Counted from the first letter of the stretch, positions 12,151 through 58,633 are shown. The stretch: 64,000 nucleotides of DNA from Dendrobates tinctorius (GCF_039654945.1 NW_027361891.1:10788001-10852000); one strand, 5' to 3'. Notes: generated from the letters alone by a model not told the origin. Program-made: numbers and translations.

Positions 12151-12584
12151 ATCTGTACAGTAATCGGCAGGGTCAGTTGCAGTTTTTTAGTATGTCACCT
12201 ATTTTCCCAAGTGAGTTTATACACTATCATAACACTATGTTATTTTTATGCAATATTGCTATTTATTTATTTACCGCAGGATATTTGCTCACTTTGTTTT
12301 TATCGTAAGTTTTCTCTGTTTAGTGACCAGTGTCAACATGCACCTACATGTTGCTTGCATACCAACACATATTCCAGTTCAGGTCTTTTGGTTTTTGTTT
12401 CAAATGTGTGCAAAATGTTTGCAAAAGGTCAAAAAAGACAAATCATAGTAGACACATTGATTCACAGCAATATTGGCTAATGCAGCATGTGATAGGTGAG
12501 CAATAATGAGATAAGAGAAAATGATTCATCCTACGTTGGCAAGTCTCAAGTAGACATTACTGGAGGTAAGCCATAAGCAATATA

Positions 12585-13725
12585 CACTCACTGGCCACTT
12601 TATTAGGTACACCATGCTAGTAACGGGTTGGACCCCCTTTTGCCTTCAGAACTGCCTCAATTCTTCGTGGCAGAGATTCAACAAGGTGCTGGAAGCATTC
12701 CTCAGAGATTTTGGACCATATTGACATGATGGCATCACACAGTTGGCGCAGATTTGTCGGCTGCACATCCCTGATGCGAATCTCCCGTTCCACCACATCC
12801 CAAAGATGCTCTATTGGATTGAGATCTGGTGACTGAGGAGGCCATTTGAGGGAGTTCTGTTCTTCCTTATTCAAAGATCCGAATTTCAATTCAGCGATAA
12901 AAGTGATAAAGGCTCGGATTGAGCCGAAACGTCGTATTAAATTATATCGCTTCTACTTCGTGCTATATATACTTGTTTGGCTCCCACATGTTTTGTATAT
13001 AATAAAAATAAGCACTTATTTGCATAAAGAAACCCCTCTGAGTGTGCGGTGAATTATATTATTATTGGTAATAGGACCTACAGGTCTGTTACGCCTGCAC
13101 CTCGCTATTGGACTTGAGTGCACGCTAACCTCCTGATTCGAGCTTTATGACATGGCGCATTATCCTGCTGAAAGTAGCCATCAGATGCCTGTTCTTAGCT
13201 GAGAGGAGTGGTACCCAGTGTGGTCTTCTGCTGCTGTAGCCCATCTGCCTCAAAGTTCGACGCACTGTGCGTTCAGAGATGCTCTTCTGCCTACCTTGGT
13301 TGTAACGGGTGGCAATTTGAGTCACTGTTGCCTTTCTATCAGCTCGAACCAGTATGCCCATTCTCCTCTGACCTCTGGCATCAACAAGGCATTTCCGGCC
13401 ACAGAACTGCCGCTCACTGTTTTTTTTTTCTTTTTCGGACCATTCTCTGTAAACCCTAGAGATGGTTGTGCGTGAAAATCCCAGTAGATCAGCAGTTTCT
13501 GAAATACTCAGACCAGCCCTTCTGGCACCAACAATCTTGCCACGTTCAAAGGCACTCAAATCACCTTTCTTCCCCATACTGATGCTCGGTTTGAACTGCA
13601 GGAGATTGTCTTGACCATGTCTACATGCCTAAATGCACTGAGTTGCCGCCATGTGATTGGCTGATTAGAAATTAAGTCTTAACACACAGTTGGACAGGTG
13701 TACCTAATAAAGTGGCCAGTGAGTG
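12585..13725 (-). mobile_element. Young internally deleted Tc1, copy 1, with a 283-bp insert
   Basis: TIR CACTCACTGGCCACTTTATTAGGTACACC at both ends and TA TSD. Near-identical to 33711-34609 and 47014-47912. ORF 13125-13577 begins MGKKGDLSAFERG. Confidence 0.95.
12851..13133 (+). mobile_element. Penelope-like short insert replacing 41 bp of Tc1
   Basis: Absent from the other two Tc1 copies, with no TSD and a target deletion. Contains GTGATAAA-GGCTC-GGATT-GAGCC-GAAACGTC (hammerhead-like variant) and AATAAA. Confidence 0.65.
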
Positions 13726-13870
13726 TATAGTCCACAAAAAGAAATTGATCACGCACTTCAGATAAAATGCAAAGTTTTATTCCTTCAATAAAAACATTTG
13801 TCAAAAGAGAGTTCACATCATCAAATGTCCAACTAAATAATCCAAGGAAAAAGTCCCAAGAAGGATTAAA

Positions 13871-14300
13871 GGCCCCGTCTCACATAACGAGATCGTTAGC
13901 GAGATCGCTGTTGCATCACCGATTTTGTGACGCAACAGCGATCTCACTACGTGTGACACATAGTGGCCACCCCCCGCTGGATATCGCTGATCGTGCTCGA
14001 ATGTCCCAGGCCATTTTCTGATCGTTGGTGTCCCGCTGGCCAGCATGTATCGCAGTGTTTGATGCCGACGAGTGACCTCGTTGGCGATGCAGAACTCAGG
14101 GACGCAGGCGTGAGTCGTCAGAATAGCTGCTGTGTGACAAGGTACCAATGACCGCCGAGGTCGTTATACGGATCGCTGGATCGTTGCTGCATCATTGAGT
14201 TGATCTGTCTGTTTGACAGCTTACTAGCGATCATTTAGCGACGCACCAGCGATCCTTACCAGGTCGTATCGCTGGTGCGTCGCTTAGTGTAACAGTACCC
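13871..14300. mobile_element. PIF/Harbinger-type MITE
   Basis: GGCCCCGTCTCACA...TGTAACAGTACCC|TAA with repeated (C)AGCGAT motifs. Same family as 32087 and 45753. Confidence 0.8.
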
Positions 14301-14645
14301 TAAGGTCTTGTTTGGCCACACTACAGGTGTTGCACTTATTAATTAGATTATTCATTGTGTGTATTGGTGGGGTTACTTAGGAGAGTTTTATATTCTGCTT
14401 GAGCTCCATTCTCACACTAGGTTATGAGTAAGAAGTGTTACCTTGAAACAAGTCAACCAAGACCTTGAACCTTCTTGGGAGTTTTTTATCTGATGATTTA
14501 GCCAGACATTGAAGATGTGGACTCTATTTTGACAAATGTTTTTATCAATGGAATGAAATTTTGTATTTTATATGAAGTGCTGGGTCAACCTGTTTTTGTG
14601 GACTGTCTTGCTATGGATTTGGGATCATGTGCACTCGTGGATAGG

Positions 14646-15521: not shown

Positions 15522-16648
15522 CTAGATTATGGCCCGATGCTATCGCATCGGGAGGATGCGATAGCATCACACCTCTTGCCATGTTAACCCTCAACACACA
15601 CACTCCTCTCACCTTTCACCATCTCCACTCACTCTTTCACTCCACATACGACCCCTTCTCTCACTCCGTCTCTCATACTCACGCCGTCATCGCCGCTGCT
15701 CCACGATCCCCGACATCTTCTTCCGCCAGCGCCATCCTGGATACAGACGTTGTCCACGCCGGCGACATGTTCTTGCGGCGACGCCATCTTGAGTATCGTG
15801 AAATCCCGCGATAGTCAAGATGGCGTCGCCGCAAGAACATGTCGCCGGCGTGGACGACGTCGGGATCCAAAATGGCGTTGGCGAAATCTCGCGAGTTTTC
15901 GCCGACGCCATTTTGGATCCCGACGTCGTCCTCGCCGGCGACATGTTCTTGCGGCAACGCCATCTTGACTATCGCGGGATTTCGCCGATCCAAAATGGCG
16001 TCACCGCATGAACATGTCGTCGGCGTGGACGACGTCGGGATCCAAAATGGCGTCGGCGAAATCTCGCGAGTTTTCGCCGACGCCATTTTGGATCCCGACG
16101 TCGTCCTCGCTGGCGACATGTTCTTGCGGCGACGCCATCTTGACTATCGCGGGATTTCGCCGATCCAAAATGGCGTCGCCGCAAGAACATGTCGCCGGCG
16201 TGGACGACGTCGGGATCCAAAATGGCGTCGGCGAAATCTCGCGAGTTTTCGCCGACGCCATTTTGGATCCCGACGTCGTCCTCGCCGGCGACATGTTCTT
16301 GCGGCGACGCCATCTTGACTATCGCGGGATTTCGCTGATCCAAAATGGCGTCGCCGCAAGAACATTTCGACGGCGTGGAGGACGTCTGGATCCAGGATGG
16401 CGCCGGCGGAAGAAGATGTCGGGGATCGTGGATCAGCGGCGATGACGGCGTGAGTATGAGAGACGGAGTGAGAGAAAGGGTCGTATGTGGAGTGAAAGAG
16501 TGAGTGGACGTGAGTGGAGATGGTGAAAGGTGAGTGGAGTGTGTGTGTTGAGGGTTAACATGGAAAGAGGTGTGCGGTGACGTCACCGGTTACAACTGGA
16601 CGGAAGTTGTTACAACCGGAAGTTGCTTAGGGCATTTATTATTATAGA
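15522..16648 (-). mobile_element. Non-autonomous Helitron carrying a palindromic CpG-rich array
   Basis: Minus strand reads A|TCTATAATAAT...CCCGATGC-GATA-GCATCGGG-CCATAAT-CTAG|T. This gives 5'-TC, a subterminal hairpin (15533-15552), 3'-CTAG, an A/T target and no TSD. Confidence 0.85.
15790..16345. repeat. 175-bp tandem repeat (~3 copies), each unit largely self-complementary
   Basis: CTTGACTATCGCGGGATTTCGC at 15964, 16139 and 16314. Each unit folds around AAATCTCGCGAGTTTT. Confidence 0.9.
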
Positions 16649-31670: not shown

Positions 31671-32086
31671 GTTGTTCTGCCCATTCATGTGTAGCAAGAC
31701 ATTTCTTAAGTGCTGTTCCAGCTATGGCCATTAGATGTCATAGTTGCCCTTCTTTTTCCTATTCTTGGAGTTAGGGTCTCCTTTCCCTTTAATTGTTATT
31801 CTGTTCAGAACCGCCCCTTCATCTTCCTGTGCTGAAGCATGTAGCCATGTTCCCTCGGATCCCTGAGCTGCTCACACGTGTCCAGCTTCCTGCAAAATCA
31901 TTGCTTATATCAAGCTGATTCCAGTGAGGTTTAATGCAGTTATGTGTTATGTGTTGTGTATCTTTGTTGGCTGGCCATGATGTAGCCCCATGATGTTGCA
32001 ATGTATTTTCAGTTTCTTATAATGCTTTTACACTGCATATTAGACAGATGCTCCCTTGTTCATTTAGCACAATGCTTGCAGCCTAA

Positions 32087-32494
32087 AGGTACTGTCACAC
32101 TTAGCGATGCACCAGCGATCCCGACCAGCGATATGACGTGGTCAGGATCGCTGGTGCATCGCTAAATGGTCGCTAGTGAGCTGCCACACAGGCATATCTC
32201 ACCAGCGACAAAGCAGAGGTCGGGGGTCGTTACTTACCTGTCAGACGGGGCGATCCTGACATCCTCCCACCCGCGTCCACGCGTCGCTCGTTGGCGCCAC
32301 AGGAAGCCCAGCAGGAAGCTGACGACGAGAAATGGTCCAGGACGTTCTCGCGCGATCAGCGATAATCAGCCGGGGAGCCGGTCGGAGGTAAGTATCAGAC
32401 ATAGCGATATCGCGAGCAATATCGCTGCTACGTCACAAAAACCAGTGACGTTATAGCGATATTGCTAGCGATATCGCTTAGTGTGACAGGCCCT
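32087..32494. mobile_element. PIF/Harbinger MITE inserted in the BEL 5' LTR only
   Basis: TAA|AGGTACTGTCACAC...GTGTGACAGGCCCT|TTA. The 3' LTR has the empty site GCCTAAGTTG. Confidence 0.9.
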
Positions 32495-33710
32495 TTAGTT
32501 GTTTAGATATCTCTTTTCTCTTTTCACTGCATTGTGTGTTGTATTGTTCAGCCTCTGTGGTGATGCCTACTGATGTAACAGCACTCTGTAATACTGCCTG
32601 CTACTGTTATGATAGTACCCTGTATTATTGCTGTGTTAATTTTTGCCAGTACTGATGTATTGTACTGTCTGTTTCTTTATAGTTTTTACCTGAAATCATC
32701 CACTTCTATATCTCTGATATCATCCACTTCTACTGTATATCTCTGATCTCATCCACAATTGTGTTCACCAATCTCCTCCTTTATATCATCCGTTATCATC
32801 TACCATTGTTGTTCACATCATCCTAATAAATATAGACTTAAGCACCCATACAGTCTTGTTACTGGGAGTGGATGAAGGGTTTAGCCGCATGCTGGAGTCC
32901 ACACAGCATCATATGTGGAAAAAGGCAGAACAATAAAATCGGAACTGCTGGTTACAGGCGGAGGTTACACAGGCTGTAAGGGACCACTATCACCCAGACT
33001 GCACCACATACGGGTATTACAGCAGCCGCCATACAGCCGCAGGGAATAAGAGCCCAGGGCACAGTAAAGGGCCGCCGGTCGCACACGGTGATTGCATAGA
33101 CTGTACTGGACCATTAACACCCACACTGCTCCGCATACGGGTATCACAGCAGCAGTCATACACCCGCAGAATGAGAGTGCAGCCCGCCAATAAGTGCTAC
33201 ATTATTCCCGCCACTCTGAAGTCTGTCTATACATAGACTCAGTTTTCCCACCAATATACTCAGCAGTACGCAGCTAAATGCACAATGTCTCGAAACAGCA
33301 CATCCTCACTCAAAACGGGATCACGAGCAAGTTCCAACAGGTCGTCAATAGCAGAGCTCGCTTCTGTCACTCGTGCTGAAGCCGAAGTGGCCAAAGAAAG
33401 ATCCTCCTTCGCCGAACGAGAAATGCATCTAAAGCTGAAACAAGCAGATGAAGATACAGAAACTGCATGTCTGCATGCTGAAACCGCACATTTGCAGGCA
33501 GAGATAATCGGAAACTGCATGTTTGCAGGCAGAGCTAGAAAGACTTGAAGACAACAAAAAATAGGAGCAAAAGAACCTCTATTGAATAATATAAAATATA
33601 ATATTTTATTAATTCAGTTTTAAAATTCTGTAAAAATTACATCATATGGACAAAAAGTATATAGAAAGACACAGACAATAAAAATCTGAGGCAACAGAGT
33701 TATATATATA

Positions 33711-34609
33711 CACTCACTGGCCACTTTATTAGGTACACCTGTCCAACTGTGTGTTAAGACTTAATTTCTAATCAGCCAATCACATGGCGGCAACTCAGTG
33801 CATTTAGGCATGTAGACATGGTCAAGACAATCTCCTGCAGTTCAAACCGAGCATCAGTATGGGGAAGAAAGGTGATTTGAGTGCCTTTGAACGTGGCATG
33901 ATTGTTGGTGCCAGAAGGGCTGGTCTGAGTATTTCAGAAACTGCTGATCTACTGGGATTTTCACGCACAACCATCTCTAGGGTTTACAGAGAATGGTCCG
34001 AAAAAGAAAAAAAATCCAGTGAGCGGCAGTTCTGTGGCCGGAAATGCCTTGTTGATGCCAGAGGTCAGAGGAGAATGGGCATACTGGTTCGAGCTGATAG
34101 AAAGGCAACAGTGACTCAAATTGCCACCCGTTACAACCAAGGTAGGCAGAAGAGCATCTCTGAACGCACAGTGCGTCGAACTTTGAGGCAGATGGGCTAC
34201 AGCAGCAGAAGACCACACTGGGTACCACTCCTCTCAGCTAAGAACAGGCATCTGATGGCTACTTTCAGCAGGATAATGCGCCATGTCATAAAGCTCGAAT
34301 CATCTCAGATTGGTTTCTTGAACATGACAATGAGTTCACTGTACTCAAATGGCCTCCTCAGTCACCAGATCTCAATCCAATAGAGCATCTTTGGGATGTG
34401 GTGGAACGGGAGATTCGCATCAGGGATGTGCAGCCGACAAATCTGCGCCAACTGTGTGATGCCATCATGTCAATATGGTCCAAAATCTCTGAGGAATGCT
34501 TCCAGCACCTTGTTGAATCTCTGCCACGAAGAATTGAGGCAGTTCTGAAGGCAAAAGGGGGTCCAACCCGTTACTAGCATGGTGTACCTAATAAAGTGGC
34601 CAGTGAGTG
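33711..34609 (+). mobile_element. Young internally deleted Tc1, copy 2 (899 bp)
   Basis: Perfect 29-bp TIRs, TA TSD in a (TA)n run, ORF 33859-34383. Confidence 0.95.
33859..34383 (+). CDS. Truncated Tc1 transposase: paired-like DNA-binding region plus frameshifted tail (174 aa)
   Basis: MGKKGDLSAFERGMIVGARRAGLSISETADLLGFSRTTISRVY...ISERTVRRTLRQMGY. The catalytic remainder QQDNAPCH...WPPQSPDLNPIEH lies in another frame. Expression is unknown. Confidence 0.6.
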   Translation: MGKKGDLSAFERGMIVGARRAGLSISETADLLGFSRTTISRVYREWSEKEKKSSERQFCGRKCLVDARGQRRMGILVRADRKATVTQIATRYNQGRQKSISERTVRRTLRQMGYSSRRPHWVPLLSAKNRHLMATFSRIMRHVIKLESSQIGFLNMTMSSLYSNGLLSHQISIQ

Positions 34610-34656
34610 TATATGGACTGTGGACAATAGGTCCACTGTGCTGTCAGATACCGCAG

Positions 34657-44335: not shown

Positions 44336-45752
44336 AATCAGTACTGACTTTCATTCATATATTCATAATGCCAATGATTATATCATCTGTCCCATCTGCC
44401 TGCCTGTCTGTCTTTTGTCTTCTGCTGCCAGTGCCAATGTGAACGTAGCCTAACTGGTGGCTTCAGTCACTGTACAGCCACACATCTTCCTGTCCACTCT
44501 GTCTTGTATCTGTAATATACTACTGCTGAGAAGCATACTATTATTGGGGTAGACAAACATGAAACAGCCCTGAAATTAGGGCTTCATTTTTGAACGGCTT
44601 ATTGCAAGCCATTGCTTCACTTTGAAACAACTAACCTTTTTCTGTCCCCTAAATAAAGGAATAATTTTTGGACAGCTTGATAAAAAGTCATTTGTAATTG
44701 TTTAAACTGTTTACCGTTGTAGTTTTTTATCTTGAAAAAGGATCCAGTGTAGCTCCAAAACTCATGTAACTGGACCACTTGTTCCACATTTGAAGGCTTA
44801 TCTACAACAGGTGGCGCAGCTTTTTAACCGTGCACACTTCCTATTATTTAATGTATTTGCTGAGGACCATCCTCCAGCACACGGCGCAACAGCTGGTATT
44901 TACAGACTTTCAAAGCTGTTGTGCTTGTGACAACCCCTCTAGGTGAGCACACTTCCTTCTCTGTCATGTTTGTATGATATCATCCTATATCTGTCACCCT
45001 TTAGCACATAGACAATTATAATTATTTAGTCATTTTGAGAATAGAAAACCTGTCTCATCCAAAAAGGGGATCATTTTTTAATTGCTAGTTCAGAAGCCAC
45101 TACAGAGCAAAGCTCTTGATATTACCAACACAGGGATACAATTTGCATCATCATGTTTCAAAAAGCCACGGTTCCTCCCATTTACACAGTCTATATATAA
45201 ACGCCGACAAGACAGGCATCTTCCCCTAGAAAGGAATAATTTTTGGATCATTTCAAAAATTTAAAGTAGCACTTTGGTGGGTTTTTTTTTGTAATTTACC
45301 CTTTTGGTATCAATGATGTGTGTATGTGTAATGGGTGCTCGCATTTGTAACCTGCCTGATCACATTGTCTTCTGTGTGTAATGGTGATTACTTTCTCAAT
45401 GCAAGTCTATGAGACTCAGAACGAGGCTTTCTAGCTTCGTTCTGAGTTTCTGACTTGCATTGAGAAAATGTAGAAAGTGACTTTTGCTTCACACAGCAGA
45501 TACTGTTTGAGTCGGCAGGTCACAAGTGCAGTCATGGTGCTAGAGAATACTGAAGCGCCAATGAAAATGGCAGGAGACTGTGATCGGTGGATATGTTACT
45601 GCACCTATTACACATACTCATATCATTGTTACCATAGGAAAAAATTAAAAATATCACTGGAGTATTTCTTTGAATAGTTTGAAAATTCTGTTACTGCATT
45701 GTTTTGTTAAATAAGCTGTTGTTCACCATTAGTCCCAACCATTTTCTTTTAA

Positions 45753-46971
45753 GGGCCTTTCACTAGCGATATCGCTAAAGCGTCACCAATTTTGTTGCAC
45801 AACAGCGATATCGCTAGTGATCTCGCTTTGTGTGACACGTACCTGCGACCGGTACCCCCGCTGGATATCGCTGATCACGCTCGAATGTCCTGGGACATTT
45901 TTTCCTCGTTGGCATCCTGCTGGCGCCGACTAGCGACGTGTTGTGAGTTCATTTTTCCCTTCACCAGTGAGGTCTGATGAACTCCCTCTTCTGGCGAAGG
46001 AAGGTAGTGAGGCTGATTACCAAACAGCTGAGCAGGTAGATGATGACTGGGTCACAGGAACTGATGACTGGATATAAGGCAGCCGACGCCCTGCTGCCTT
46101 GCTGGTGATCTTCCCGCTGGATTCTTGGAGACCAGTCTGATTTCTGCTTCTCAAAGCTAAGTTTTGCTCTACCTTTTGTACACTTTAGTTCTGGTTTTGT
46201 TTGCCTTGTTTTTTGGAGTTCAGCCATCCCCGGCCGGGGGTGAGCTGAATTCCATTTTTTGTCTCTGATCTGTTGATCTCTGGCTCTGTCTTCAGAATAT
46301 ACCTGAGTGCTGATATAGTCTTTTTGAAGCCTAGCGACTTCAAGGACTGTTTTTCCTATCAGTCTGTTGGTTCATTTTTGGATAGGGTTTTTGTGGATTT
46401 CAGACAGCAGCTTTTCTATCCTGTCTTATTTAGTTAGCTTGGGCCCCATCATTTGCTCAACCTATCTTTCTATCTGTGTTAGTGTTTTTCATCTTGCTTC
46501 ACAGTCATTTTATGTTGGGGGCTGCCTATTGCTTTGGGGTCTGCTCTGGGGCAGTTTAGATTTCCCCTTTCTGTCTTTAGGCTAATTTAGTTCTCCGGCT
46601 GTGATCGAGGGGTCTAGGGCACCGTAGGAACCCCCCACGGCTACTGCTAGTTGTTGTGGATAGGTTCAGGGGTCTGCAATCGGATAGCTTCCAACTTCTC
46701 TGGTTTTCTTGACTTAGCTATTATTTTTGTTTTTTCCTCCTTCGGTGACTCATCCATAACAGCGACGCATGGATGCAGGCGGAAGTCATCATCATCGCTG
46801 CGGTGTGACAGGTAACAGCGACCGCTGACGGATCGCTTATCGCTGCTTCGTCGCTGGTGAGATCAGCCTGTTTGGCAGCTCACTAGCGACCATTTAGCGA
46901 TGCATCAGTGATCCTGACCAGGTCGAATAGTTGTCGGGATTGCTGGTGCATCGCTAAATGTAACGGGACCC
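45753..46971. mobile_element. PIF/Harbinger MITE split by a solo LTR
   Basis: TAA|GGGCCTTTCAC...TGTAACGGGACCC|TTA. Homologous to 13871-14300. Confidence 0.8.
45939..46761. mobile_element. Solo LTR (823 bp)
   Basis: TGTTGTGA...CCATAACA with exact 6-bp TSD GCGACG. Confidence 0.85.
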
Positions 46972-47013
46972 TTAGTCAGTTAGGTTGAGGACATTTATAA
47001 CCAAGAAAATATA

Positions 47014-47912
47014 CACTCACTGGCCACTTTATTAGGTACACCTGTCCAACTGTGTGTTAAGACTTAATTTCTAATCAGCCAATCACATGGCGGCAACTCA
47101 GTGCATTTAGGCATGTAGACATGGTCAAGACAATCTCCTGCAGTTCAAACCGAGCATCAGTATGGGGAAGAAAGGTGATTTGAGTGCCTTTGAACGTGGC
47201 AAGATTGTTGGTGCCAGAAGGGCTGGTCTGAGTATTTCAGAAACTGCTGATCTACTGGGATTTTCACACACAACCATCTCCAGGGTTTACAGAGAATGGT
47301 CCGAAAAAGAAAAAAAATCCAGTGAGCGGCAGTTCTGTGGCCGGAAATGCCTTGTTGATGCCAGAGGTCAGAGGAGAATGGGCATACTGGTTCGAGCTGA
47401 TAGAAAGGCAACAGTGACTCAAATTGCCACCCGTTACAACCAAGGTAGGCAGAAGAGCATCTCTGAACGCACAGTGCATCGAACTTTGAGGCAGATGGGC
47501 TACAGCAGCAGAAGACCACACTGGGTACCACTCCTCTCAGCTAAGAACAGGCATCTGATGGCTACTTTCAGCAGGATAATGCGCCATGTCATAAAGCTCG
47601 AATCATCTCAGATTGGTTTCTTGAACATGACAATGAGTTCACTGTACTCAAATGGCCTCCTCAGTCACCAGATCTCAATCCAATAGAGCATCTTTGGGAT
47701 GTGGTGGAACGGGAGATTCGCATCAGGGATGTGCAGCCGACAAATCTGCGCCAACTGTGTGATGCCATCATGTCAATATGGTCCAAAATCTCTGAGGAAT
47801 GCTTCCAGCACCTTGTTGAATCTCTGCCACGAAGAATTGAGGCAGTTCTGAAGGCAAAAGGGGGTCCAACCCGTTACTAGCATGGTGTACCTAATAAAGT
47901 GGCCAGTGAGTG
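47014..47912 (+). mobile_element. Young internally deleted Tc1, copy 3 (899 bp)
   Basis: Same TIRs and TA TSD. ORF 47162-47686 differs from copy 2 at 3 residues. Confidence 0.95.
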
Positions 47913-50134
47913 TATTTATAAGGCTGTGTTTGTGTTAAAGACCTCAAAAGAGGTCCAATACACTCCTAGGATTGTTATACATGTCTTTTCTGAAAAAGTA
48001 GTGACTTTACAATATTGGGATTCAAAGTGAATTTATAGGCTGCAAATCAAATTTGGGGGAAAATTTGGCAAATGCGGTAAATTTGAATTTCAAACGATCT
48101 ACTCATCTCTATTTGCAACATTTATTTTTTAAGTAAGATGGTTAATCTACTTACCGTCATCTCATTAATTTTTTTAACTGATGTTATACTTTGTACTTGT
48201 CTCGTTGAAATTTCTAATTTATCAGTAGAAAAAACAGTGCCAAATTCACGAGCTTTCATTCTTGCACATATATAATTGTAAATGTCTCACCTCACTTACT
48301 TTTGTCATTACTCAAAAGTTTTATATACTTGACATTCCCACTTTGAAGGTCACTTTCTTGTTCATTTTAGATGGTGATATATTCGTGCACAGCATTGGTC
48401 AGAATTTTGATTTGTAACTGGCTGTACTACTTAAAGCATTACTATTTTATGGTTTGCAATTATTTTTACTTGCACATACATTTAAAACATTTTGCCAAGG
48501 TCATAGCTGGCTTAATTCAGCTTACTTTCGCAGTTCCTTATCATATATTTTAATATGTATACAATGTTACATAATTACATAACTTCAGAGATGTCTGACA
48601 CCAAAGGTTAGCACAGCTATCAAAATATTTATCCTAAATGTAAATTACTTACAGGCACACAAACGCCTTTATAGAATAGATTTCTTATTCATTCATACAG
48701 TGCTATTTAATAATGTCCCAAAATGCACTCTGCATAGCAACAACCGTTACCTTGGAAATGCCTGATGTCGTCAGTCTAATAGAAATTATTTAAAGGGGTT
48801 TTTCCAGGCTGAAAAAGTACAGAACTGTGAAAGTGTGTGTCGTATACACTGTCATGATTCCCCTGTACTACCCCCTGCATGAGTGGGTGGTCATACGACA
48901 TATTCACGTAACACTATATCAACAATAATCTTGGTCTTCCATATTTATCTTGGCCTTGCAGATTTTACTTCTGTTACAATAAAAACTAAGCATGTTCTCC
49001 TGATGAACCTATTGACTGAATTATATACAGTATATCACAAAAGTGAGTACACCCCTCACATTTTTGTAAATATTTAGTTTTTTAATGGGACAACACAAAG
49101 ATATGACACTTCCATACAACATAATGTAGTCAGCATACAGCTTTTATAACAGTATGCTCTCTAAATAACTCAACACACAGCCATTAGTATCTGAAGTGCT
49201 GGCAACAAAAGTGAGTACACCCCTAAGTGAAAATGGCCAAATTGTCAATATTTTGTGTGACCGTCATTATTTTTAAGCACTGTCTTAACTTTGTTAAGTA
49301 TGGAATTCACTAGAGCTTCACAGGGTGTCACTGGAATATTCCACTCCTCCATGACGACATCACAGAGCTGTTGGATGTTAGAAATCTTGTACTCCACCTT
49401 CCATTTGAGGATGCCCCACAGATGCTCAATAGGGTTTAGGTCTGGAGCAGGGTAGGACTGGCCCATCGGAGAATCCTCTGGTGGGCCCAGGCACTTACAT
49501 CTGCTGCCATACAGGGCTGGCAGCTACCTAGGGCCCCCCAGCTAATGCCTTGTTGCTAATAGCAGTACACCCAGCTGCTATGGGGCCCCTGAGTCAGGGG
49601 GATCTGACCGGTGCCAGCGGAGCAGCAGCTGGAGACAGGAGCCTGTCCCTGCTGCTAAAGAGAAATTAATATTCACACTTCCCCACACCCCCAGAGGCAT
49701 GGAGAGGAGTGAATATTCATTTCACTTTAATAGTGGGCAGTGTTAGCCGCAGGCTGAGGCTAACACTGCCTGCAAGAGCAGACACACCCATGTAAAGCAG
49801 AGGCCAGAGGTGGGCTCCTGCAGGGTGGCTAACCCTGAGGGCAATCGGCGGGCAGGGAGCGATCCTTGCAGCTCCACTGCCTACAGGACAGAACGGCAGC
49901 AGAGCAGATCTTCAGGGATTCGATGCTGTCCTGTTTCCTGCCCGGCACTTCTTGTCTGACAGAGTGGTGCAGCTGGATGACATCATTCAGTGCGCGGCTG
50001 TTTCAGAGAGAAAGCTGCCGGCGACGAAGATGCTGCGGCTGTGGGGAAAGTGCGGAGAGGTGAGTGGTACTGTGTGTCTGTGTGCTTATGTGCAACAGTA
50101 GTGCTGTGTGTGTGCAGTGCTGTGTGTGTATTGG

Positions 50135-50900
50135 AGTTGGCAATGATGTGGGTGATGGAGAGCAGTGATGGGGTGGTAGGGGAGAAGGCAATGTTGGGGG
50201 TGTTGGAAAGGACGATAGGGGTGGTGGAGGAGGAGGCAATGATGGAGGTGATGGAATGGGTAATGATGAGGTGGTGGGAGAAAAGGCAATGATGGTTGTG
50301 GTGGAAATGACAATGATGATAGTGGTTCGGGGGGGAGGCAATGATGGAGGTGTTGGAGAGGGCAATGATGGGAGTGGTGGGGGAGAAACCAATGATAGAG
50401 GTGGCGGAAAGGGCAATGATGAGTTGGTGGGGGAGGAAGCAATGATGGGGTAGGTAGAAGGCAATGATGATTGTGGTGTAAAGGACAATGATGGAGTGGT
50501 GGAAAGGACAGTGATGGTGGTGGTGATGGGGAAGGCAATGATGAAGGTGGTGGAATGGGCAATGATGGGGGTGGTGGGGGAGAAAGCAATGAAGGAGGAG
50601 TTGGAGAGGACAATGATGGGAGTGGTGGGGGAGAAACCAATGATAGAGGTGGCGGAAAAGGCAATGATGAGTTGGTGGGAGAGAAAGCAATGATGGGGTA
50701 GGGAGAAGGCAATGATTATTGTGGTGGAAGGGACAATGATGGAGTGGTGGAAAGGACAGTGATGGTGGTGGTGGTGGGGGAGGCAATGATGGAGGTGGTG
50801 GAATGGGCAATGATGGGGGTGGTGGGGGAGAAAGCAATGATGGGGGTGGTGATGAAGACAATGATGGGGTGGAGAGGGAGAACAATGATGGAGGTGGGGG
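50135..50900. repeat. G/A-rich 21-25-bp minisatellite
   Basis: Unit core GGCAATGATGGRGGTGGTGG, with a higher-order ~240-bp repeat (50365-50600 vs 50613-50845). Confidence 0.9.
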
Positions 50901-51632
50901 GAGCTGAATTATACCTTATGAAGGTGGCTGCATTATACTATATAAAGGGATTGCATTTTACCCTATGAAGGGGGCAGCACTATACCCTATGAGGGGGGCT
51001 GCATTACACTATATGAGGGGGGCTGCATTATACCATATGAGGGGGCTGCATTTTACTATATGAAGGGGCTACATTATACTATATGATGGGGCTGTGCTAT
51101 ACTTTGAGTGGGCTAAATTATATTCTGTGGGGGGATCTGCATTATATTCTGTGTGGGGGCTGCATTATTGTCTCACGGGGCTACATTATATTCTGGGGGC
51201 TACATTATACTATATAAGGGAGGCTGCATTATGCCCGGAGGGGGCTAGAGTATATTCTATGGGGGCTGCATTATACTCTGATGGGTCTACATTATATTCT
51301 GTGGAGGGGCTGCATTATACTATATGAGGGGGACTGCATTATACCCTATGAGGGGACTACATTATATTCTATGAGGGGTGCTGCATTATACCCTATGAGG
51401 GGGCTGCATTATATTCTATGAGGGGGGCTGCATTATATTCCATGAGAGAGGCTACATTATATTCTATAAGGGGGCTACTTTATATTCTTTGAGGGGGCTA
51501 TATTATATTCTATGAGGGGGCTGCATTATATACTATGAGGGGGGCTACATTATATTCTATGTGGGGCTACTTTATATTCTATGAAGGGGCTACATTATAT
51601 TCTATGAGGGGGCTACTTTATATTATATGAGG
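50900..51632. repeat. 21-23-bp minisatellite
   Basis: Unit GGGGGCTRCATTATAYTCTATGA. Confidence 0.9.
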
Positions 51633-52558
51633 GTCTACCACAATTCCTGCTATATAATTAAGACATGTACTACCTTATATTACACCCTGATATTAGCATG
51701 TTTTACCATACAATTGGTTGTCTTGTATTTATTTCTATGTAGCTACATAGTGGGCCCCAAGAATCATTTTCTCTGGTGGGCCCAAGGTGCTCCAGTCCAA
51801 CACTGGTCTGGAGGTATGCTTGGCCACTCCAGCTCATTTATCCTCAGTTTCTTTAGCAAGGTAGTTGTTGTTTTAGAGGTGTGCTTGGGGTTGTTATGTT
51901 GGAATACTGCCCTACAGCCCAGTTTCTGAAGGAAGGGGATCATGCGCTGCTTCAGTATATCACAGCACATGTTGGCATTCATGGTCCCCTCAATAAATTG
52001 TAACTCCCCACAGCCAGCAGCACTCATGCAGCCCCAAACCCTGACACTCCCACCACCCTTCTTACAATAGTCAAGACACACTTGTCTTTGTGCTCCTCAC
52101 TTGGTTGCCGCCACACACGCTTGACACCATCTGAACCAAATAAGTTTATCTTGGTCTTATCAGACCACAGGACATGGTTCCAGTAAGCCATGTCCTGAGT
52201 CTGCTTGTCGTCAGCAAAAGTTTTTTGGGACTTTCTTGTGCACCATCTTTAGAAGAGGCTTCCTTCTGGGACAACAGCCATGCAGACTAATTTGATGATG
52301 TGTGCGGCATATGGTATGAGCACTGGCTTGCTGACGTCTCCCATTAACCTCTGCAGCAATGCTGGCAGCTCTCATACGTCTATTTTAAAAGACAACTTCT
52401 GGATATGACGCCGAGCACGTGTACCCAATTTCTTTGGTTGACCTTGGCAAGGCCAGTTCTGAATGGAACCTATCTTGTTAAACCACTGTATGGTCTTGGC
52501 CACTGTGTTGCAGCTCAGTTGCATGGTGTTGGCAATCTTCTTATAGTCTAGGCCAACA

Positions 52559-56423: not shown

Positions 56424-57638
56424 TTAACTGCCAGGGTAATAGATACATGATGCCTGAGAGCAGGGAGGATTCTGGTCCTCTTTGGTTTTGGGTTATCTTT
56501 CAGCATGCATCACTGAACACAATTTCAGTTGATATTGGAAATGGAATCCAAATGTATATTACTTACAGGGTCTGGCCAGCGTGGATTCAGAGCTTGTTAA
56601 TGCCCAGAACTTGCTGATAAATAAATCATATTGAACAGTAAATATTCATAAAGAAGAAAATGAAGTTCAATTATTGCCCGAGTAAAGGCTGACAGTATTA
56701 TAGCTCTAATGAGAAGTCATCCTTATAAAAAATAAATGGAGCTTTTCTTAACATATTTTGGATGATACATGCAGACTGAAGATTTGAGTTCTAGGAATGT
56801 GTTATCTTCCCTAGGCAGATCTGTGACCGGGCTAATAGGATTATTTGATTGTTACAGCTGTTAAATAGGTTCAGTTATTTTCCAGGAATAACAGGAAGTC
56901 AGTGATAAACTCTAAAGTCATATAAAAGCACATTCCGGTCTGATATTAAAAGGGTTGTCTGGTCTTCTGCTAAAAGTCTACTGTCCCTCTATGTAAGTCA
57001 CATACTTACATTTAAGTGACCACCCGCTCTTACTGCCAATACCGGTGAATCCTGACAGTGTGCGCACTACGCACTGTGAAGATCCAGGAGTCTGCAGCTA
57101 GATAGAGTCAGAAGACTGCACAACCTCATTACGTTGCTTCTCACTTCTTACATTTGTTTTGAAGTAGCTGTAATAAGTTTTACAAGATTTTGCCATAGCC
57201 TACAGTTGTCCTAATGTCGTCTGCCGTGCATTCCACAGTTGCTGGTAAACCTTTGCAGAAATAGACAGGCTAACTTTATGTGGAATGCAAATTGATATGC
57301 AGTGGCTTGCGCAAGTACTCACCCCCTTGGCTTTTTACCTGTTTTGTTACATTACAACCTGTGTTTAAATATCCAGTTTGTGTGACACATCAGCAATAAA
57401 TAGTGTAAGTTGGTAAAGTGAAGTGAGAAAAATATAGGAATAAACTAAGTTTATGGGATCACATAACTAAAACTTGGCATGTGGCATATATATTCACCCC
57501 TTTTGCTATGAAGAATCTAACAATTTCTGGTGCAAGCAATTACCTTCATAAGTCACATGCTTACTGATAGGAAGTCCACCTGCGTGCAACTATCAATATA
57601 TACCCACCTTTTCTGAAAGGCCACAGAGGCTGCACCAC

Positions 57639-58633
57639 TAGGGATGGGCGAATCCTGAAATATTCGGAATCGCTAGGCTGTAACGAGTCCGACTTGGAAA
57701 ATCGCTATTCGTTGCAAGTCTAGCGAGTCCAATGTTAATGAATGGGGATGTGAGTTTTGCAGCGATTCCTGTGCTGGGGAGGAGGAGAATGGGGATGTAG
57801 AGTTCTTAGCGATTTTGTGTCAGCAGCTGGACACAAAATCGCTAAGGCCGGTTTCACATTAGCGCTTTTTAAGCGCACGCACGGCCGGGGGTAGCTCCGC
57901 CCCCGAGCCGGCTCTCTGCCCGGCGTGCCCGCCCCTTGCTTATAGCACGCCAAAATCAAACTTTTCGGATTTTGGCGCGCACGGCGCACCGTCAGAAGTG
58001 CGCAGCGCAGGTCAAAGCGCAACTAGCGCACGGCCTGCGCACGATCTGCGCACCCTATGCTAAAGATAGGGTGCGCCGATCGCAGGCGCCGCTGTCCGCT
58101 AGGAGGCGGCGCTATAAGCAAGGGGAGGGCACGCCGGGCAGAGAGCCGGCTCGGGGGCGGAGCTACCCCCGGCCGTGCGTGCGCTTAAAAAGCGCTAATG
58201 TGAAACCAGCCTAAGAAACTAGGATTGCTTGTTATTAAACTGTGAAAAAAGTAGCTAGAGTTCTCTCTGTTTTGCGATTCCTGTGCAGGGGAGGAGGAGA
58301 ATGGGGATGCGAGTTTGCCAGCGAGTCCTGTGCTGGAGGGGGGAGAGAGAGAGAGAGAGGAGAATGGGGATGAGAGAGAGAGAGAGAAAAAAAAAAATCC
58401 TAGCTAGTTTTTTCACAGTTTAATACAAGCAATCCTAGTTTCTTAGCGATTTTGTGTCCAGCTGCTGACACAAAATCGCTAAGAAACTCTGCAAAAACTA
58501 GGATTGCCATTCATTTGCATTGGACTCGTTACTGTGCGAGTAATCGCTTGGAAACTCGCAGAGTACCGACTCCTGCGAGTCCCCTACTATTCGCAGAGTA
58601 ACGAGTCCTAATGAGTAGATTCGCCCATCCCTA
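57639..58633. mobile_element. hAT MITE inside Tc1
   Basis: TAGGGATGGGCGAATC...GATTCGCCCATCCCTA with exact 8-bp TSD TGCACCAC. Confidence 0.9.
57846..58211. mobile_element. GC-rich PIF/Harbinger MITE with ~100-bp TIRs
   Basis: TAA|GGCCGGTTTCACATTAGCG...CGCTAATGTGAAACCAGCC|TAA. Confidence 0.9.

What the first reader, a model, noticed from the sequence alone, without database searches (positions are those of the whole stretch)
15522..16648. Helitron filled with a palindrome-of-palindromes bearing ~14 YY1-like motifs
Seen: between canonical Helitron ends, ~15579-16563 is one large imperfect inverted repeat. Its outer arms are pyrimidine-rich and purine-rich, around three 175-bp units that are each largely self-complementary. 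CAA(A/G)ATGGCG or its complement occurs about 14 times, and CpGs are dense and largely undecayed. Established: CAA(A/G)ATGGC is the YY1 core, and Helitrons move by rolling-circle via ssDNA. Inference: a young mobile CpG-island-like YY1 array that would fold into a highly branched ssDNA or cruciform and could act as a portable regulatory or looping element.
Basis: partly seen in the sequence, partly recalled or inferred. Interest (0 to 1): 0.72.

Follow-up and report, generated by a model that had tools for sequence, protein, structure and literature searches.

The report
Helitron carrying palindromic YY1-motif array
A 1.1-kb non-coding rolling-circle transposon (Helitron) in a frog-type genome carries a hairpin-forming, CpG-rich array of 175-bp repeats with 14-16 YY1-type sites. 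The structure is real, but nothing tested here shows it is more than a young selfish element made of known kinds of parts.

Summary
Window 15522-16648 is a non-autonomous Helitron on the minus strand. It has a 5' TC, a 14-bp hairpin 10 nt before a 3' CTAG, and an A|T target. Its body (15568-16574) is one long inverted repeat around 3.9 copies of a self-complementary 175-bp unit. It holds 14 exact CAARATGGCG sites (0.2 expected) and has CpG o/e 1.47, against 0.46 for the window.

- The 14 motifs are four per unit copied by amplification, not 14 independent events.
- The "palindrome of palindromes" reduces to one foldback, a nested hairpin in each arm, and a 175-bp tandem amplification.
- Five of the eight private substitutions among units are CpG transitions, so high CpG fits youth better than protection.

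Two things are new here. The body is bounded by TTAA|CCC...GGG|TTAA, so it may be a nested piggyBac-type foldback MITE inside a 156-bp mini-Helitron. ETS, CRE and BANP-type motifs and outward-facing GTGAGT sites give it the look of a bidirectional housekeeping promoter.

YY1 binding, hypomethylation, transcription and looping were not tested. I could not fetch any other copy. Earlier unchecked notes of this scan report similar Helitron/YY1 palindromes elsewhere in this genome (s1-382954, s1-377151, s1-364626).

The parts
15522..16648 (-). Whole non-autonomous Helitron, 1127 bp, inserted between host A and T
   Evidence: TC...CTAG ends on the minus strand, no target duplication, and no coding capacity (one search gave no protein relative; the ORFs are stop-poor CpG-rich artefacts).
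16559..16648 (-). Left terminal sequence (5' end of the Helitron). It starts TCTATAATAATAAAT and carries two ETS-type sites (16600, 16616) and a 14-bp palindrome around a perfect CRE, TGACGTCA (16575-16588).
15522..15568 (-). Right terminal sequence. A 14-bp perfect hairpin (15536-15549 / 15555-15568, loop GGGAG) is followed by 10 nt and then CTAG.
   Evidence: the hairpin forms on its own in the fold of the full element.
15568..16574 (.). Long imperfect inverted repeat (foldback body) with its centre at 16066/16067
   Evidence: I1, I2, I9; alignment of the two halves; fold.
15584..15587 (.). Left TTAA, directly followed by CCCTCAAC..., which starts a candidate piggyBac-type terminal inverted repeat
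   Evidence: It is the only TTAACC...GGTTAA pair with matching termini (19 of 20) in the window.
16555..16558 (.). Right TTAA, directly preceded by ...GTTGAGGG
15588..15715 (.). Left outer arm, pyrimidine-rich on the + strand (purine fraction 0.27), with GTGAGT-type sites on the minus strand that face outward
16417..16554 (.). Right outer arm, purine-rich (0.72), with four GTGAGT on the + strand facing outward, one of them AAAG|GTGAGT at 16529. It also contains a 10-bp tandem duplication at 16500-16518.
15716..15815 (.). Degenerate outer half-unit R0 (15716-15791) plus a spacer in flipped orientation (15792-15815)
15816..16340 (.). Three full 175-bp units. Each consists of a forward 76-nt half, a reverse 76-nt half and a 23-nt spacer, with four YY1-type sites and 30 CpG per unit.
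16341..16416 (.). Degenerate outer half-unit F4, the mirror of R0
15884..15899 (.). Unit centre AAATCTCG|CGAGTTTT (BANP-type CGCG palindrome). The same centre recurs at 16059-16074 and 16234-16249.
   Evidence: motif taken from the paper abstracts listed.

Best explanation
This is a young, non-coding (non-autonomous) Helitron of the canonical Helitron1 type. It would be moved in trans by a RepHel transposase encoded elsewhere.

Shown here: the 5' TC, the 3' hairpin plus CTAG, and insertion between A and T without duplication.

Inferred from the Helraiser model: the transposase nicks the minus strand at the 5' TC and unwinds 5' to 3'. The 14-bp hairpin stops it for cleavage after CTAG. The excised strand, probably circularised, then reinserts at an AT.

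The cargo is a CpG-rich foldback. It has an outer inverted repeat and a hairpin nested in each arm. A 175-bp segment lying between two direct copies of a 76-nt half-unit was then amplified to three full units by slippage or unequal exchange. That amplification multiplied four YY1-type sites per unit to 14-16.

High CpG is mainly a sign of youth and of the TE origin of the cargo. It is not evidence of host protection.

The motif set (YY1, BANP-type centre, ETS, CRE, outward GTGAGT) looks like a vertebrate bidirectional housekeeping promoter. If it does anything, it most plausibly serves the element itself, keeping copies open or transcribed in the germline as the YY1-bearing monomers of mouse L1 Tf do. 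In the single-stranded intermediate the body would zip into a roughly 480-bp branched stem that places the two Helitron termini side by side. That last point is inference only.
For: - End features. They match the published Helraiser/Helibat hallmarks (5'-TC/CTAG-3', palindrome 11 nt from the end, AT target).
- Array and inverted repeats. The forward and reverse halves carry fixed differences shared by all three units, so the 175-bp unit, not the half, was the amplified piece.
- Unit divergence is 8 changes in 525 nt, and 5 of the 8 are CpG transitions. By my binomial estimate P is about 0.02 against a 23% expectation.
- No coding capacity. No Rfam family. No host gene detected in the window, which is transposon-rich and holds three 99-100% identical Tc1-like copies. 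That shows very recent transposon activity in this genome.
- Fold z = -74.
- Precedents: rolling-circle elements carrying short arrays of 140-180-bp monomers; Helitron-borne promoters; YY1-dependent tandem L1 monomers.
Against: - Only one copy could be read. Mobility of this family, and the sharing of its ends by other copies, rest on unchecked notes of this scan.
- No RepHel gene lies in the window.
- CpG sites changed only about 3 times faster per base than other sites (5/180 against 3/345). That is less than the roughly tenfold expected for fully methylated DNA, so partial protection from methylation is not excluded. The counts are tiny.
- T2-like MITE cores in the same window keep CpG o/e of about 1 at only 72-80% identity. 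This hints that some TE-borne CpG cores in this genome may resist decay.
Confidence: 0.7

Rival explanations
1. One reading: the family is a portable, methylation-resistant CpG island. Its YY1 array (with ETS, CRE and BANP sites) acts as a bidirectional promoter, enhancer or YY1-mediated looping anchor wherever it lands. The outward GTGAGT sites let it splice into neighbouring exons.
For: - The sites match the YY1 consensus CGCCATnTT exactly: 14 found against 0.2 expected.
- The unit centre contains AAATCTCG, reported as the optimal BANP BEN-domain site.
- ETS x2 and a perfect CRE lie in the left terminal sequence, and GTGAGT sites face outward in both arms.
- CpG o/e is 1.47-1.70.
- Precedents: the NUBPL promoter of HelibatN3 drives chimeric transcripts; YY1 sites are needed for L1 Tf monomer promoter activity and synergy; a YY1-bearing transposon wave occurred on the Poecilia picta X.
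Against: - There are no expression, methylation or binding data.
- The motif count is inflated by duplication of a single unit.
- Five of the eight private substitutions are CpG transitions. YY1 binding is blocked by methylation of its CpG.
- GTGAGT recurs in a low-complexity GTGAG-rich arm, so the splice-donor look may be incidental.
- No gene was detected nearby.
Confidence: 0.2
2. Rival for the origin: the body is not native Helitron sequence. It is a 967-bp piggyBac-type foldback MITE (15588-16554) that inserted at a TTAA in the middle of a 36-bp palindrome of a 156-bp miniature Helitron. The composite may since have spread as a Helitron.
For: - TTAA lies immediately outside CCCTCAAC... 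and ...GTTGAGGG on both sides, with 19 of 20 terminal bases complementary. It is the only such pair in the window.
- The chance of TTAACCC occurring in the outer 40 nt of an arm is about 0.003.
- TTAA target plus CCC/GGG termini is the piggyBac signature (my own knowledge). The Kolobok/T2 alternative requires AGG termini, and that is not met.
- Miniature Helitrons of about 152 bp are known in frogs. MITEs carrying amplified internal tandem repeats are known in Xenopus (Xmix/Xstir).
Against: - The inverted repeat continues 16 bp beyond each TTAA with a single mismatch. That is unexpected for a random target and requires a palindromic target site.
- TTAA is itself palindromic and lies inside an inverted repeat, so its presence on both sides is not independent evidence.
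- No free copy of such a MITE and no empty 156-bp Helitron was seen in the window.
Confidence: 0.35
3. The palindrome or the number of units is an assembly artefact, for example a chimeric palindromic long read or a collapsed or expanded array.
For: Long zero-spacer palindromes and short tandem arrays are error-prone in assembly. No read-level data were available here.
Against: - The palindrome sits exactly between two different, canonical Helitron termini.
- The arms differ by about 5% and by a 10-bp indel, and the two central spacers break the symmetry. A read-through artefact would give a clean mirror image running off into the flank.
- Earlier notes describe similar elements at other loci.
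Confidence: 0.03
4. The main consequence is at the RNA level. Read-through transcription of the foldback gives a long double-stranded hairpin RNA that is processed into small RNAs, which silence the family.
For: The same complementarity that gives the DNA fold would hold for RNA. The idea itself rests on my general knowledge of inverted-repeat transposons as small-RNA sources.
Against: There is no transcript or small-RNA evidence, and no host transcription unit was detected around the element.
Confidence: 0.1

Closest known systems
Helibat/Helraiser-type canonical Helitrons, including HelibatN3 with the captured NUBPL promoter (PMC4778049)
   Same: 5'-TC and CTAG-3' ends, a subterminal palindrome about 10-11 nt from the 3' end, an AT target without duplication, and non-autonomous copies that carry a promoter-like module with a splice donor.
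   Different: The cargo here is a palindromic tandem array. It is not a recognisable one-way gene fragment (promoter, first exon, donor), and no source gene is known. No transcription is shown.
Rolling-circle elements with central tandem repeats: oyster Cg_HINE and Drosophila DINE-1 Helentrons (PMC7492417, PMC4067079), and Xenopus Heli2Xen with 166-bp minisatellites (PMC12001565)
   Same: Non-autonomous elements whose body is a short array (about 2-7 copies) of 140-180-bp monomers, with copy number varying between insertions.
   Different: Those are Helitron2/Helentron-type elements with subterminal inverted repeats. This one has Helitron1-type ends. Its monomers are self-complementary, CpG-saturated and set inside a long foldback.
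Heli1Xen1 of Xenopus and other vertebrates (PMC12001565)
   Same: A vertebrate Helitron1 family with TC/CTAG ends and abundant miniature non-autonomous copies of about 152 bp.
   Different: Its hairpin is CCCGTTA...TAACGGG and its left end has TATATAAA. Here the hairpin stem is GATGCTATCGCATC and the left end is TCTATAATAATAAAT, so this is a different family.
Mouse LINE-1 Tf 5'UTR monomers (PMC11602158)
   Same: A transposon-borne tandem array of about 200-bp CpG-rich monomers, 2-4 per element, each with a YY1 site. There the sites are required for promoter activity and for synergy between monomers, and binding is blocked by CpG methylation.
   Different: That element is a retrotransposon with its own genes to express, and its monomers are direct repeats facing one way. 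Here the element is non-coding and the sites alternate in orientation in pairs.
Xmix/Xstir T2-MITEs of Xenopus and the Tetris foldback element of Drosophila virilis (PMC6004289, PMC4079207)
   Same: TTAA-targeting or foldback DNA elements whose internal segment is amplified into tandem repeats.
   Different: T2/Kolobok termini are AGGRR, whereas here they are CCC...GGG. The whole structure also sits inside Helitron ends.
Clustered YY1 sites of Peg3/Xist control regions, and the YY1-bearing piggyBac-like transposon wave on the Poecilia picta X (PMC11602158 discussion; PMC10760456)
   Same: Dense arrays of CGCCATnTT sites whose CpG makes binding methylation-dependent. In P. picta the sites were spread by a DNA transposon.
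   Different: Those have methylation and expression data behind them. Here there are none, and the density results from a single recent amplification.

Membership tests
Canonical Helitron (Helitron1 type), non-autonomous | 5' terminus TC | tested here: met
   The minus strand starts with TC at 16648-16647.
Canonical Helitron (Helitron1 type), non-autonomous | 3' terminus CTRR | tested here: met
   The minus strand ends with CTAG at 15525-15522.
Canonical Helitron (Helitron1 type), non-autonomous | Short GC-rich hairpin about 10-20 nt upstream of the 3' end | tested here: met
   A perfect 14-bp stem with a 5-nt loop ends 10 nt before CTAG. It forms independently in the fold. Helraiser has its palindrome 11 nt upstream.
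Canonical Helitron (Helitron1 type), non-autonomous | Insertion between host A and T, no target-site duplication, no terminal inverted repeats | tested here: met
   The flanks read ...gtacta | tattctg.... The termini are not inverted copies of each other.
Canonical Helitron (Helitron1 type), non-autonomous | Multiple copies sharing the termini, empty sites, and a RepHel-encoding partner | not testable with these tools
   There is no second copy and no paralogous empty site in the window, and no RepHel domain among 20 ORFs. Public scans gave nothing usable. Only unchecked sibling notes exist.
Helitron2 / Helentron (HINE, DINE-1, Heli2Xen) | Subterminal inverted repeats at both ends and a 3' end without CTRR | tested here: not met
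   The ends are TC...CTAG with a single 3' hairpin. Only the tandem-repeat cargo resembles this group.
piggyBac-type MITE (for the body 15588-16554) | TTAA target duplication flanking termini that begin CCC and end GGG | tested here: met
   TTAA at 15584-15587 and 16555-16558; termini CCCTCAAC... and ...GTTGAGGG, 19 of 20 complementary.
piggyBac-type MITE (for the body 15588-16554) | Sequence outside the duplication is unrelated target DNA; free copies exist elsewhere | tested here: inconclusive
   The inverted repeat runs 16 bp beyond each TTAA. No free copy is present in the window. The rest of the genome could not be searched.
Kolobok / T2-MITE | TTAA target with AGGRR termini | tested here: not met
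   The termini are CCC/GGG, not AGG.
CpG island (sequence criteria only) | At least 500 bp, GC at least 0.55, CpG o/e at least 0.65 | tested here: met
   1120 bp, GC 0.57, o/e 1.47.
CpG island (functional sense) | Unmethylated in the germline | tested here: inconclusive
   Five of the eight private substitutions are CpG transitions, which points to some methylation. Only 5 of 90 CpGs are lost. Direct methylation data were not available.
YY1-bound element | Sequence match to CGCCATnTT / AAnATGGCG | tested here: met
   14 exact CAARATGGCG. Consensus taken.
YY1-bound element | YY1 occupancy in cells or in vitro | not testable with these tools
   Needs EMSA or CUT&RUN in frog cells.

The most novel reading that the evidence does not exclude
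A Helitron family, perhaps after swallowing a piggyBac-type foldback, spreads ready-made, methylation-resistant bidirectional CpG-island promoters through a giant frog genome. These carry paired YY1 sites, a BANP centre, ETS and CRE sites and outward splice donors. Unrelated transposon families in the same genome (T2-like MITEs, Penelope-like and piggyBac-like elements, according to earlier notes) would have converged on the same housekeeping-promoter design as a way to stay open in the germline.
Probability: 0.12. Interest if true: 0.7.

Novelty: new variant of a known kind. Interest (0 to 1): 0.38.

Why it matters
If the family is unmethylated and bound by YY1, it would be a natural system for studying how a DNA transposon carries a complete CpG-island promoter to new sites in a vertebrate. 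It would also show whether dense YY1 arrays can nucleate open chromatin or loops. The possible Helitron-plus-piggyBac composite would be a clear case of one transposon class hitch-hiking inside another. The foldback body that brings the two Helitron termini together in the single strand suggests a testable aid to rolling-circle transposition. As things stand, it is a well-preserved example of known themes: Helitrons carrying tandem repeats or promoters, and transposon-borne YY1 sites.

Tried and rejected
- Other copies in the window: none for either terminus with up to 3 mismatches. None for the whole element by blastn with word size 9. None for the candidate piggyBac-type terminus.
- Paralogous empty site: the flanks are unique in the window.
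- Public collections: a 23-nt unit pattern in the metagenome contigs gave one hit (L001). It is a chance match in a high-GC, bacterial-looking coding region with no repeat around it, so it was discarded. Viral contigs gave nothing for the unit or for the 3' terminus. No fetched contig looked human.
- Reaching other copies through called ORFs: the 159-aa ORF across the array found no protein relative. This also argues against coding capacity.
- Rfam at gathering level: no family anywhere in the window.
- Pfam on 20 long ORFs: only Tc1-type transposase helix-turn-helix domains. No RepHel and no host gene.
- Heli1Xen1 membership: rejected because its hairpin and left end differ.
- NRF1-type GCGCATGCGC: absent. 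A ZNF143-type ACTAYRNNNCCCR reading of the 23-nt spacer fails at two positions by inspection.
- Selective constraint on the YY1 sites: not testable with 8 substitutions. One falls in a motif, at its degenerate position, against 1.8 expected.

Full report
OBSERVATION

- Tandem Repeats Finder reports one array at 15730-16408: period 175, 3.9 copies, 92% matches and no indels.
- The repeat finder gives three full units spaced 175 bp apart that are 94-96% alike. It also finds a set of inverted repeats that together make 15568-16574 one long imperfect palindrome centred at 16066/16067.
  - The outer arms, 15568-15632 against 16510-16574 and 15624-15791 against 16341-16508, are 95-97% complementary.
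  - Each unit is a palindrome with a zero spacer, with arms of 76-92 nt that are 91-96% complementary.
- The outer arms have purine fractions of 0.27 and 0.72.
- CAARATGGCG occurs exactly 14 times in the 64-kb window, always inside the element. Shuffles give 0.2 expected and a maximum of 1. Two degenerate CAGGATGGCG copies bring the ATGGCG cores to 16.
- The element has 133 CpG in 1127 bp, GC 0.57 and CpG o/e 1.47 (1.70 in the core). The window is 0.46 and the right flank 0.10. It is the longest and strongest CpG island in the window.

HELITRON ENDS

The ends are canonical but lie on the minus strand.
- Read on that strand, the element starts with TC at 16648.
- It carries a perfect 14-bp hairpin (15536-15549 / 15555-15568, 5-nt loop).
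- It ends 10 nt later with CTAG at 15522.
- The host bases on either side are A and T, and there is no target duplication.

These are the hallmarks described for Helibat/Helraiser: 5'-TC/CTAG-3', a palindrome 11 nt from the end, and an AT target. The hairpin and left end differ from Heli1Xen1 of Xenopus (CCCGTTA...TAACGGG; TATATAAA), so this is another family. The element is non-coding. Its long ORFs occur in several frames of a stop-poor CpG-rich repeat, and the longest array ORF has no relative among 5.8 billion proteins. Rfam finds nothing.

ANATOMY OF THE BODY

Written on the + strand, the body reads: left arm, R0, flipped spacer, then (F, R, spacer) three times, then F4, right arm.
- F and R are the two orientations of a 76-nt half-unit, each with two YY1-type sites 52 nt apart.
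- The spacer is 23 nt. The outermost left spacer is inverted relative to the other three.
- F and R carry fixed differences that all three units share. The 175-bp piece (F, R, spacer) was therefore the unit of amplification, after the two halves had diverged.

A tandem array of self-complementary units is automatically a global palindrome. The "palindrome of palindromes" therefore reduces to three events:
1. A foldback with zero spacer.
2. A hairpin nested in each arm (R0 or F4 against its neighbouring half, across the 23-nt spacer).
3. Tandem amplification of the 175 bp lying between two direct copies of the half-unit.

The 14 motifs are thus four per unit, multiplied by amplification. They are not 14 independent occurrences.

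MOTIFS

- The sites match the published YY1 consensus CGCCATnTT. The Peg3 and Xist sites GCCGCCATTTTG and GGCGCCATCTTT are examples.
- Each unit centre reads AAATCTCG|CGAGTTTT. AAATCTCG is reported as the optimal site of the BANP BEN domain, and TCTCGCGAGA as the BANP motif.
- The Helitron left end carries two ETS-type sites (16600, 16616) and a 14-bp palindrome around a perfect CRE (16575-16588).
- GTGAGT sites face outward in both arms, one of them AAAG|GTGAGT at 16529. They lie in GTGAG-rich low-complexity sequence, so they may be incidental.

On paper this set resembles a bidirectional housekeeping promoter. None of it has been tested.

CpG AND AGE

Against their majority consensus, the three full units show 8 private substitutions in 525 nt. 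Five of these are CpG-to-TpG or CpG-to-CpA.
- CpG positions make up 34% of the unit. With a 2:1 transition bias I expect about 23% of changes to be of this type. My binomial estimate for 5 or more of 8 is about 0.02.
- The copy has therefore probably been methylated in the germline for at least part of its life.
- Its high CpG content is most simply explained by youth. The unit divergence is about 1.5%, and the zero-spacer palindromes and terminal hairpin are intact.
- Two caveats apply. CpG sites changed only about three times faster per base than other sites, and the counts are tiny. Partial protection from methylation is therefore not excluded.

The window is a transposon-rich stretch with very recent activity. 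Three internally deleted Tc1-like copies are 99-100% identical. No host gene was detected.

SINGLE-STRAND FOLD

The minus strand of the body folds as DNA to -600 kcal/mol, against -189 +/- 5.6 for shuffles (z = -74). The full element reaches -638 kcal/mol, with the terminal hairpin and the left end left outside the big branched stem. That stem would place the two Helitron termini next to each other. Whether this helps circle formation is inference.

The body is bounded by TTAA (15584-15587) followed by CCCTCAAC..., and by ...GTTGAGGG followed by TTAA (16555-16558).
- Nineteen of the 20 terminal bases are complementary, and it is the only such pair in the window.
- A TTAA target with CCC/GGG termini is the piggyBac signature (my own knowledge). 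The Kolobok/T2 alternative requires AGG termini.
- Removing the 967-bp body and one TTAA leaves a 156-bp mini-Helitron. That is close to the 152-bp miniature Helitrons described in Xenopus.
- Against this reading, the inverted repeat continues 16 bp beyond each TTAA with one mismatch. The target would therefore have had to be a 36-bp palindrome. In addition, a TTAA inside an inverted repeat is bound to appear on both sides.

I give this origin about 0.35.

OTHER COPIES

I could not read any other copy. The window has none. The metagenome scan gave one chance match in a bacterial-looking contig. Viral contigs gave nothing. None of the fetched DNA looked human.

Earlier notes of this scan, unchecked and without sequence, describe similar elements in the same genome:
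- Helitrons with a roughly 1-kb CpG hairpin and about 12 YY1 sites (s1-377151, 1114 letters).
- About 10 YY1 sites plus BANP, CRE and ETS motifs (s1-382954, 975 letters).
- A 700-bp palindrome with seven YY1 motifs next to CRE and ETS sites (s1-364626, 768 letters).

Those lengths are near the 1127, 952 and 777 bp expected for three, two and one units. That would fit a multi-copy family with variable unit number, but I did not verify it. Follow-up notes name the genome as the dyeing poison frog (s1-362257). I did not check this myself.

MECHANISM AND RIVALS

Best reading (0.7): this is a young non-autonomous Helitron moved in trans by a RepHel enzyme.
- The end features are shown here. The transposition steps are inferred from Helraiser.
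- The cargo is a transposon-derived CpG-rich foldback with an amplified 175-bp minisatellite.
- The promoter-like motifs, if used at all, serve the element itself, as YY1 sites do in mouse L1 Tf monomers.

Rivals:
- A functional portable promoter or looping element, 0.2.
- A nested piggyBac-type MITE as the origin of the body, 0.35. This is compatible with the main reading.
- Hairpin RNA as a source of small RNAs, 0.1.
- An assembly artefact, 0.03. It is made unlikely by the distinct termini, the roughly 5% arm divergence, a 10-bp indel and the asymmetric central spacers.

COMPARISON AND NOVELTY

Each ingredient has a precedent:
- Rolling-circle elements with short arrays of 140-180-bp monomers: oyster Cg_HINE, DINE-1 and Xenopus Heli2Xen.
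- Helitron-borne promoters with splice donors: HelibatN3.
- Transposon-borne YY1 arrays: L1 Tf and the Poecilia picta X wave.
- Frog MITEs with amplified internal repeats: Xmix/Xstir.

A full-text search for Helitron together with YY1 returned nothing comparable. The combination of Helitron1-type ends, a foldback body, self-complementary CpG-saturated units and a housekeeping-promoter motif set is, as far as I could see, undescribed. I therefore class it as a new variant of a known kind, with moderate interest (0.38). Methylation, binding and genome-wide copy data are still needed.

Noticed in passing
window 12580-13729 (-), 33706-34614 (+), 47008-47915 (+): Three internally deleted Tc1/mariner-like copies with 33-bp terminal repeats and intact HTH_Tnp_Tc3_2/HTH_23 N-terminal ORFs. 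They are 99-100% identical to one another, and the first has about 283 bp extra. This is a sign of very recent DNA-transposon activity in this genome.
   Followed up: partly
window 13866-14305 and 32083-32498 (also 45741-46060): T2-like, TTAA/AGG-ended palindromic MITE cores packed with AGCGAT/ATCGCT hairpins. They keep CpG o/e of about 0.9-1.1 although the copies are only 72-80% alike. Either they belong to different subfamilies or their CpG cores resist decay, which bears on whether TE-borne CpG islands are protected in this genome.
   Followed up: partly
window 57601-58531: Another CpG-island-like block (760 bp, o/e 0.99) built of nested inverted repeats, with 105-nt arms 97% complementary and a perfect 44-nt pair 595 nt apart. 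It is probably another foldback-type element.
   Followed up: no
window 50132-51633: Two adjacent G-rich minisatellites with strong GC skew (0.49). One has periods of 24/51/248 nt (50132-50897) and the other 23/47 nt (50899-51633). The long ORFs there are repeat artefacts.
   Followed up: no
The Rfam scan of the whole window at gathering thresholds returned no family at all, hammerhead included. I did not run a more permissive scan.
   Followed up: no
window 13729-13872 and 14463-14604: A 144-nt inverted repeat, about 80% complementary, brackets the T2-like MITE directly beside the first Tc1-like copy. This suggests nested insertions just upstream of the Helitron.
   Followed up: no
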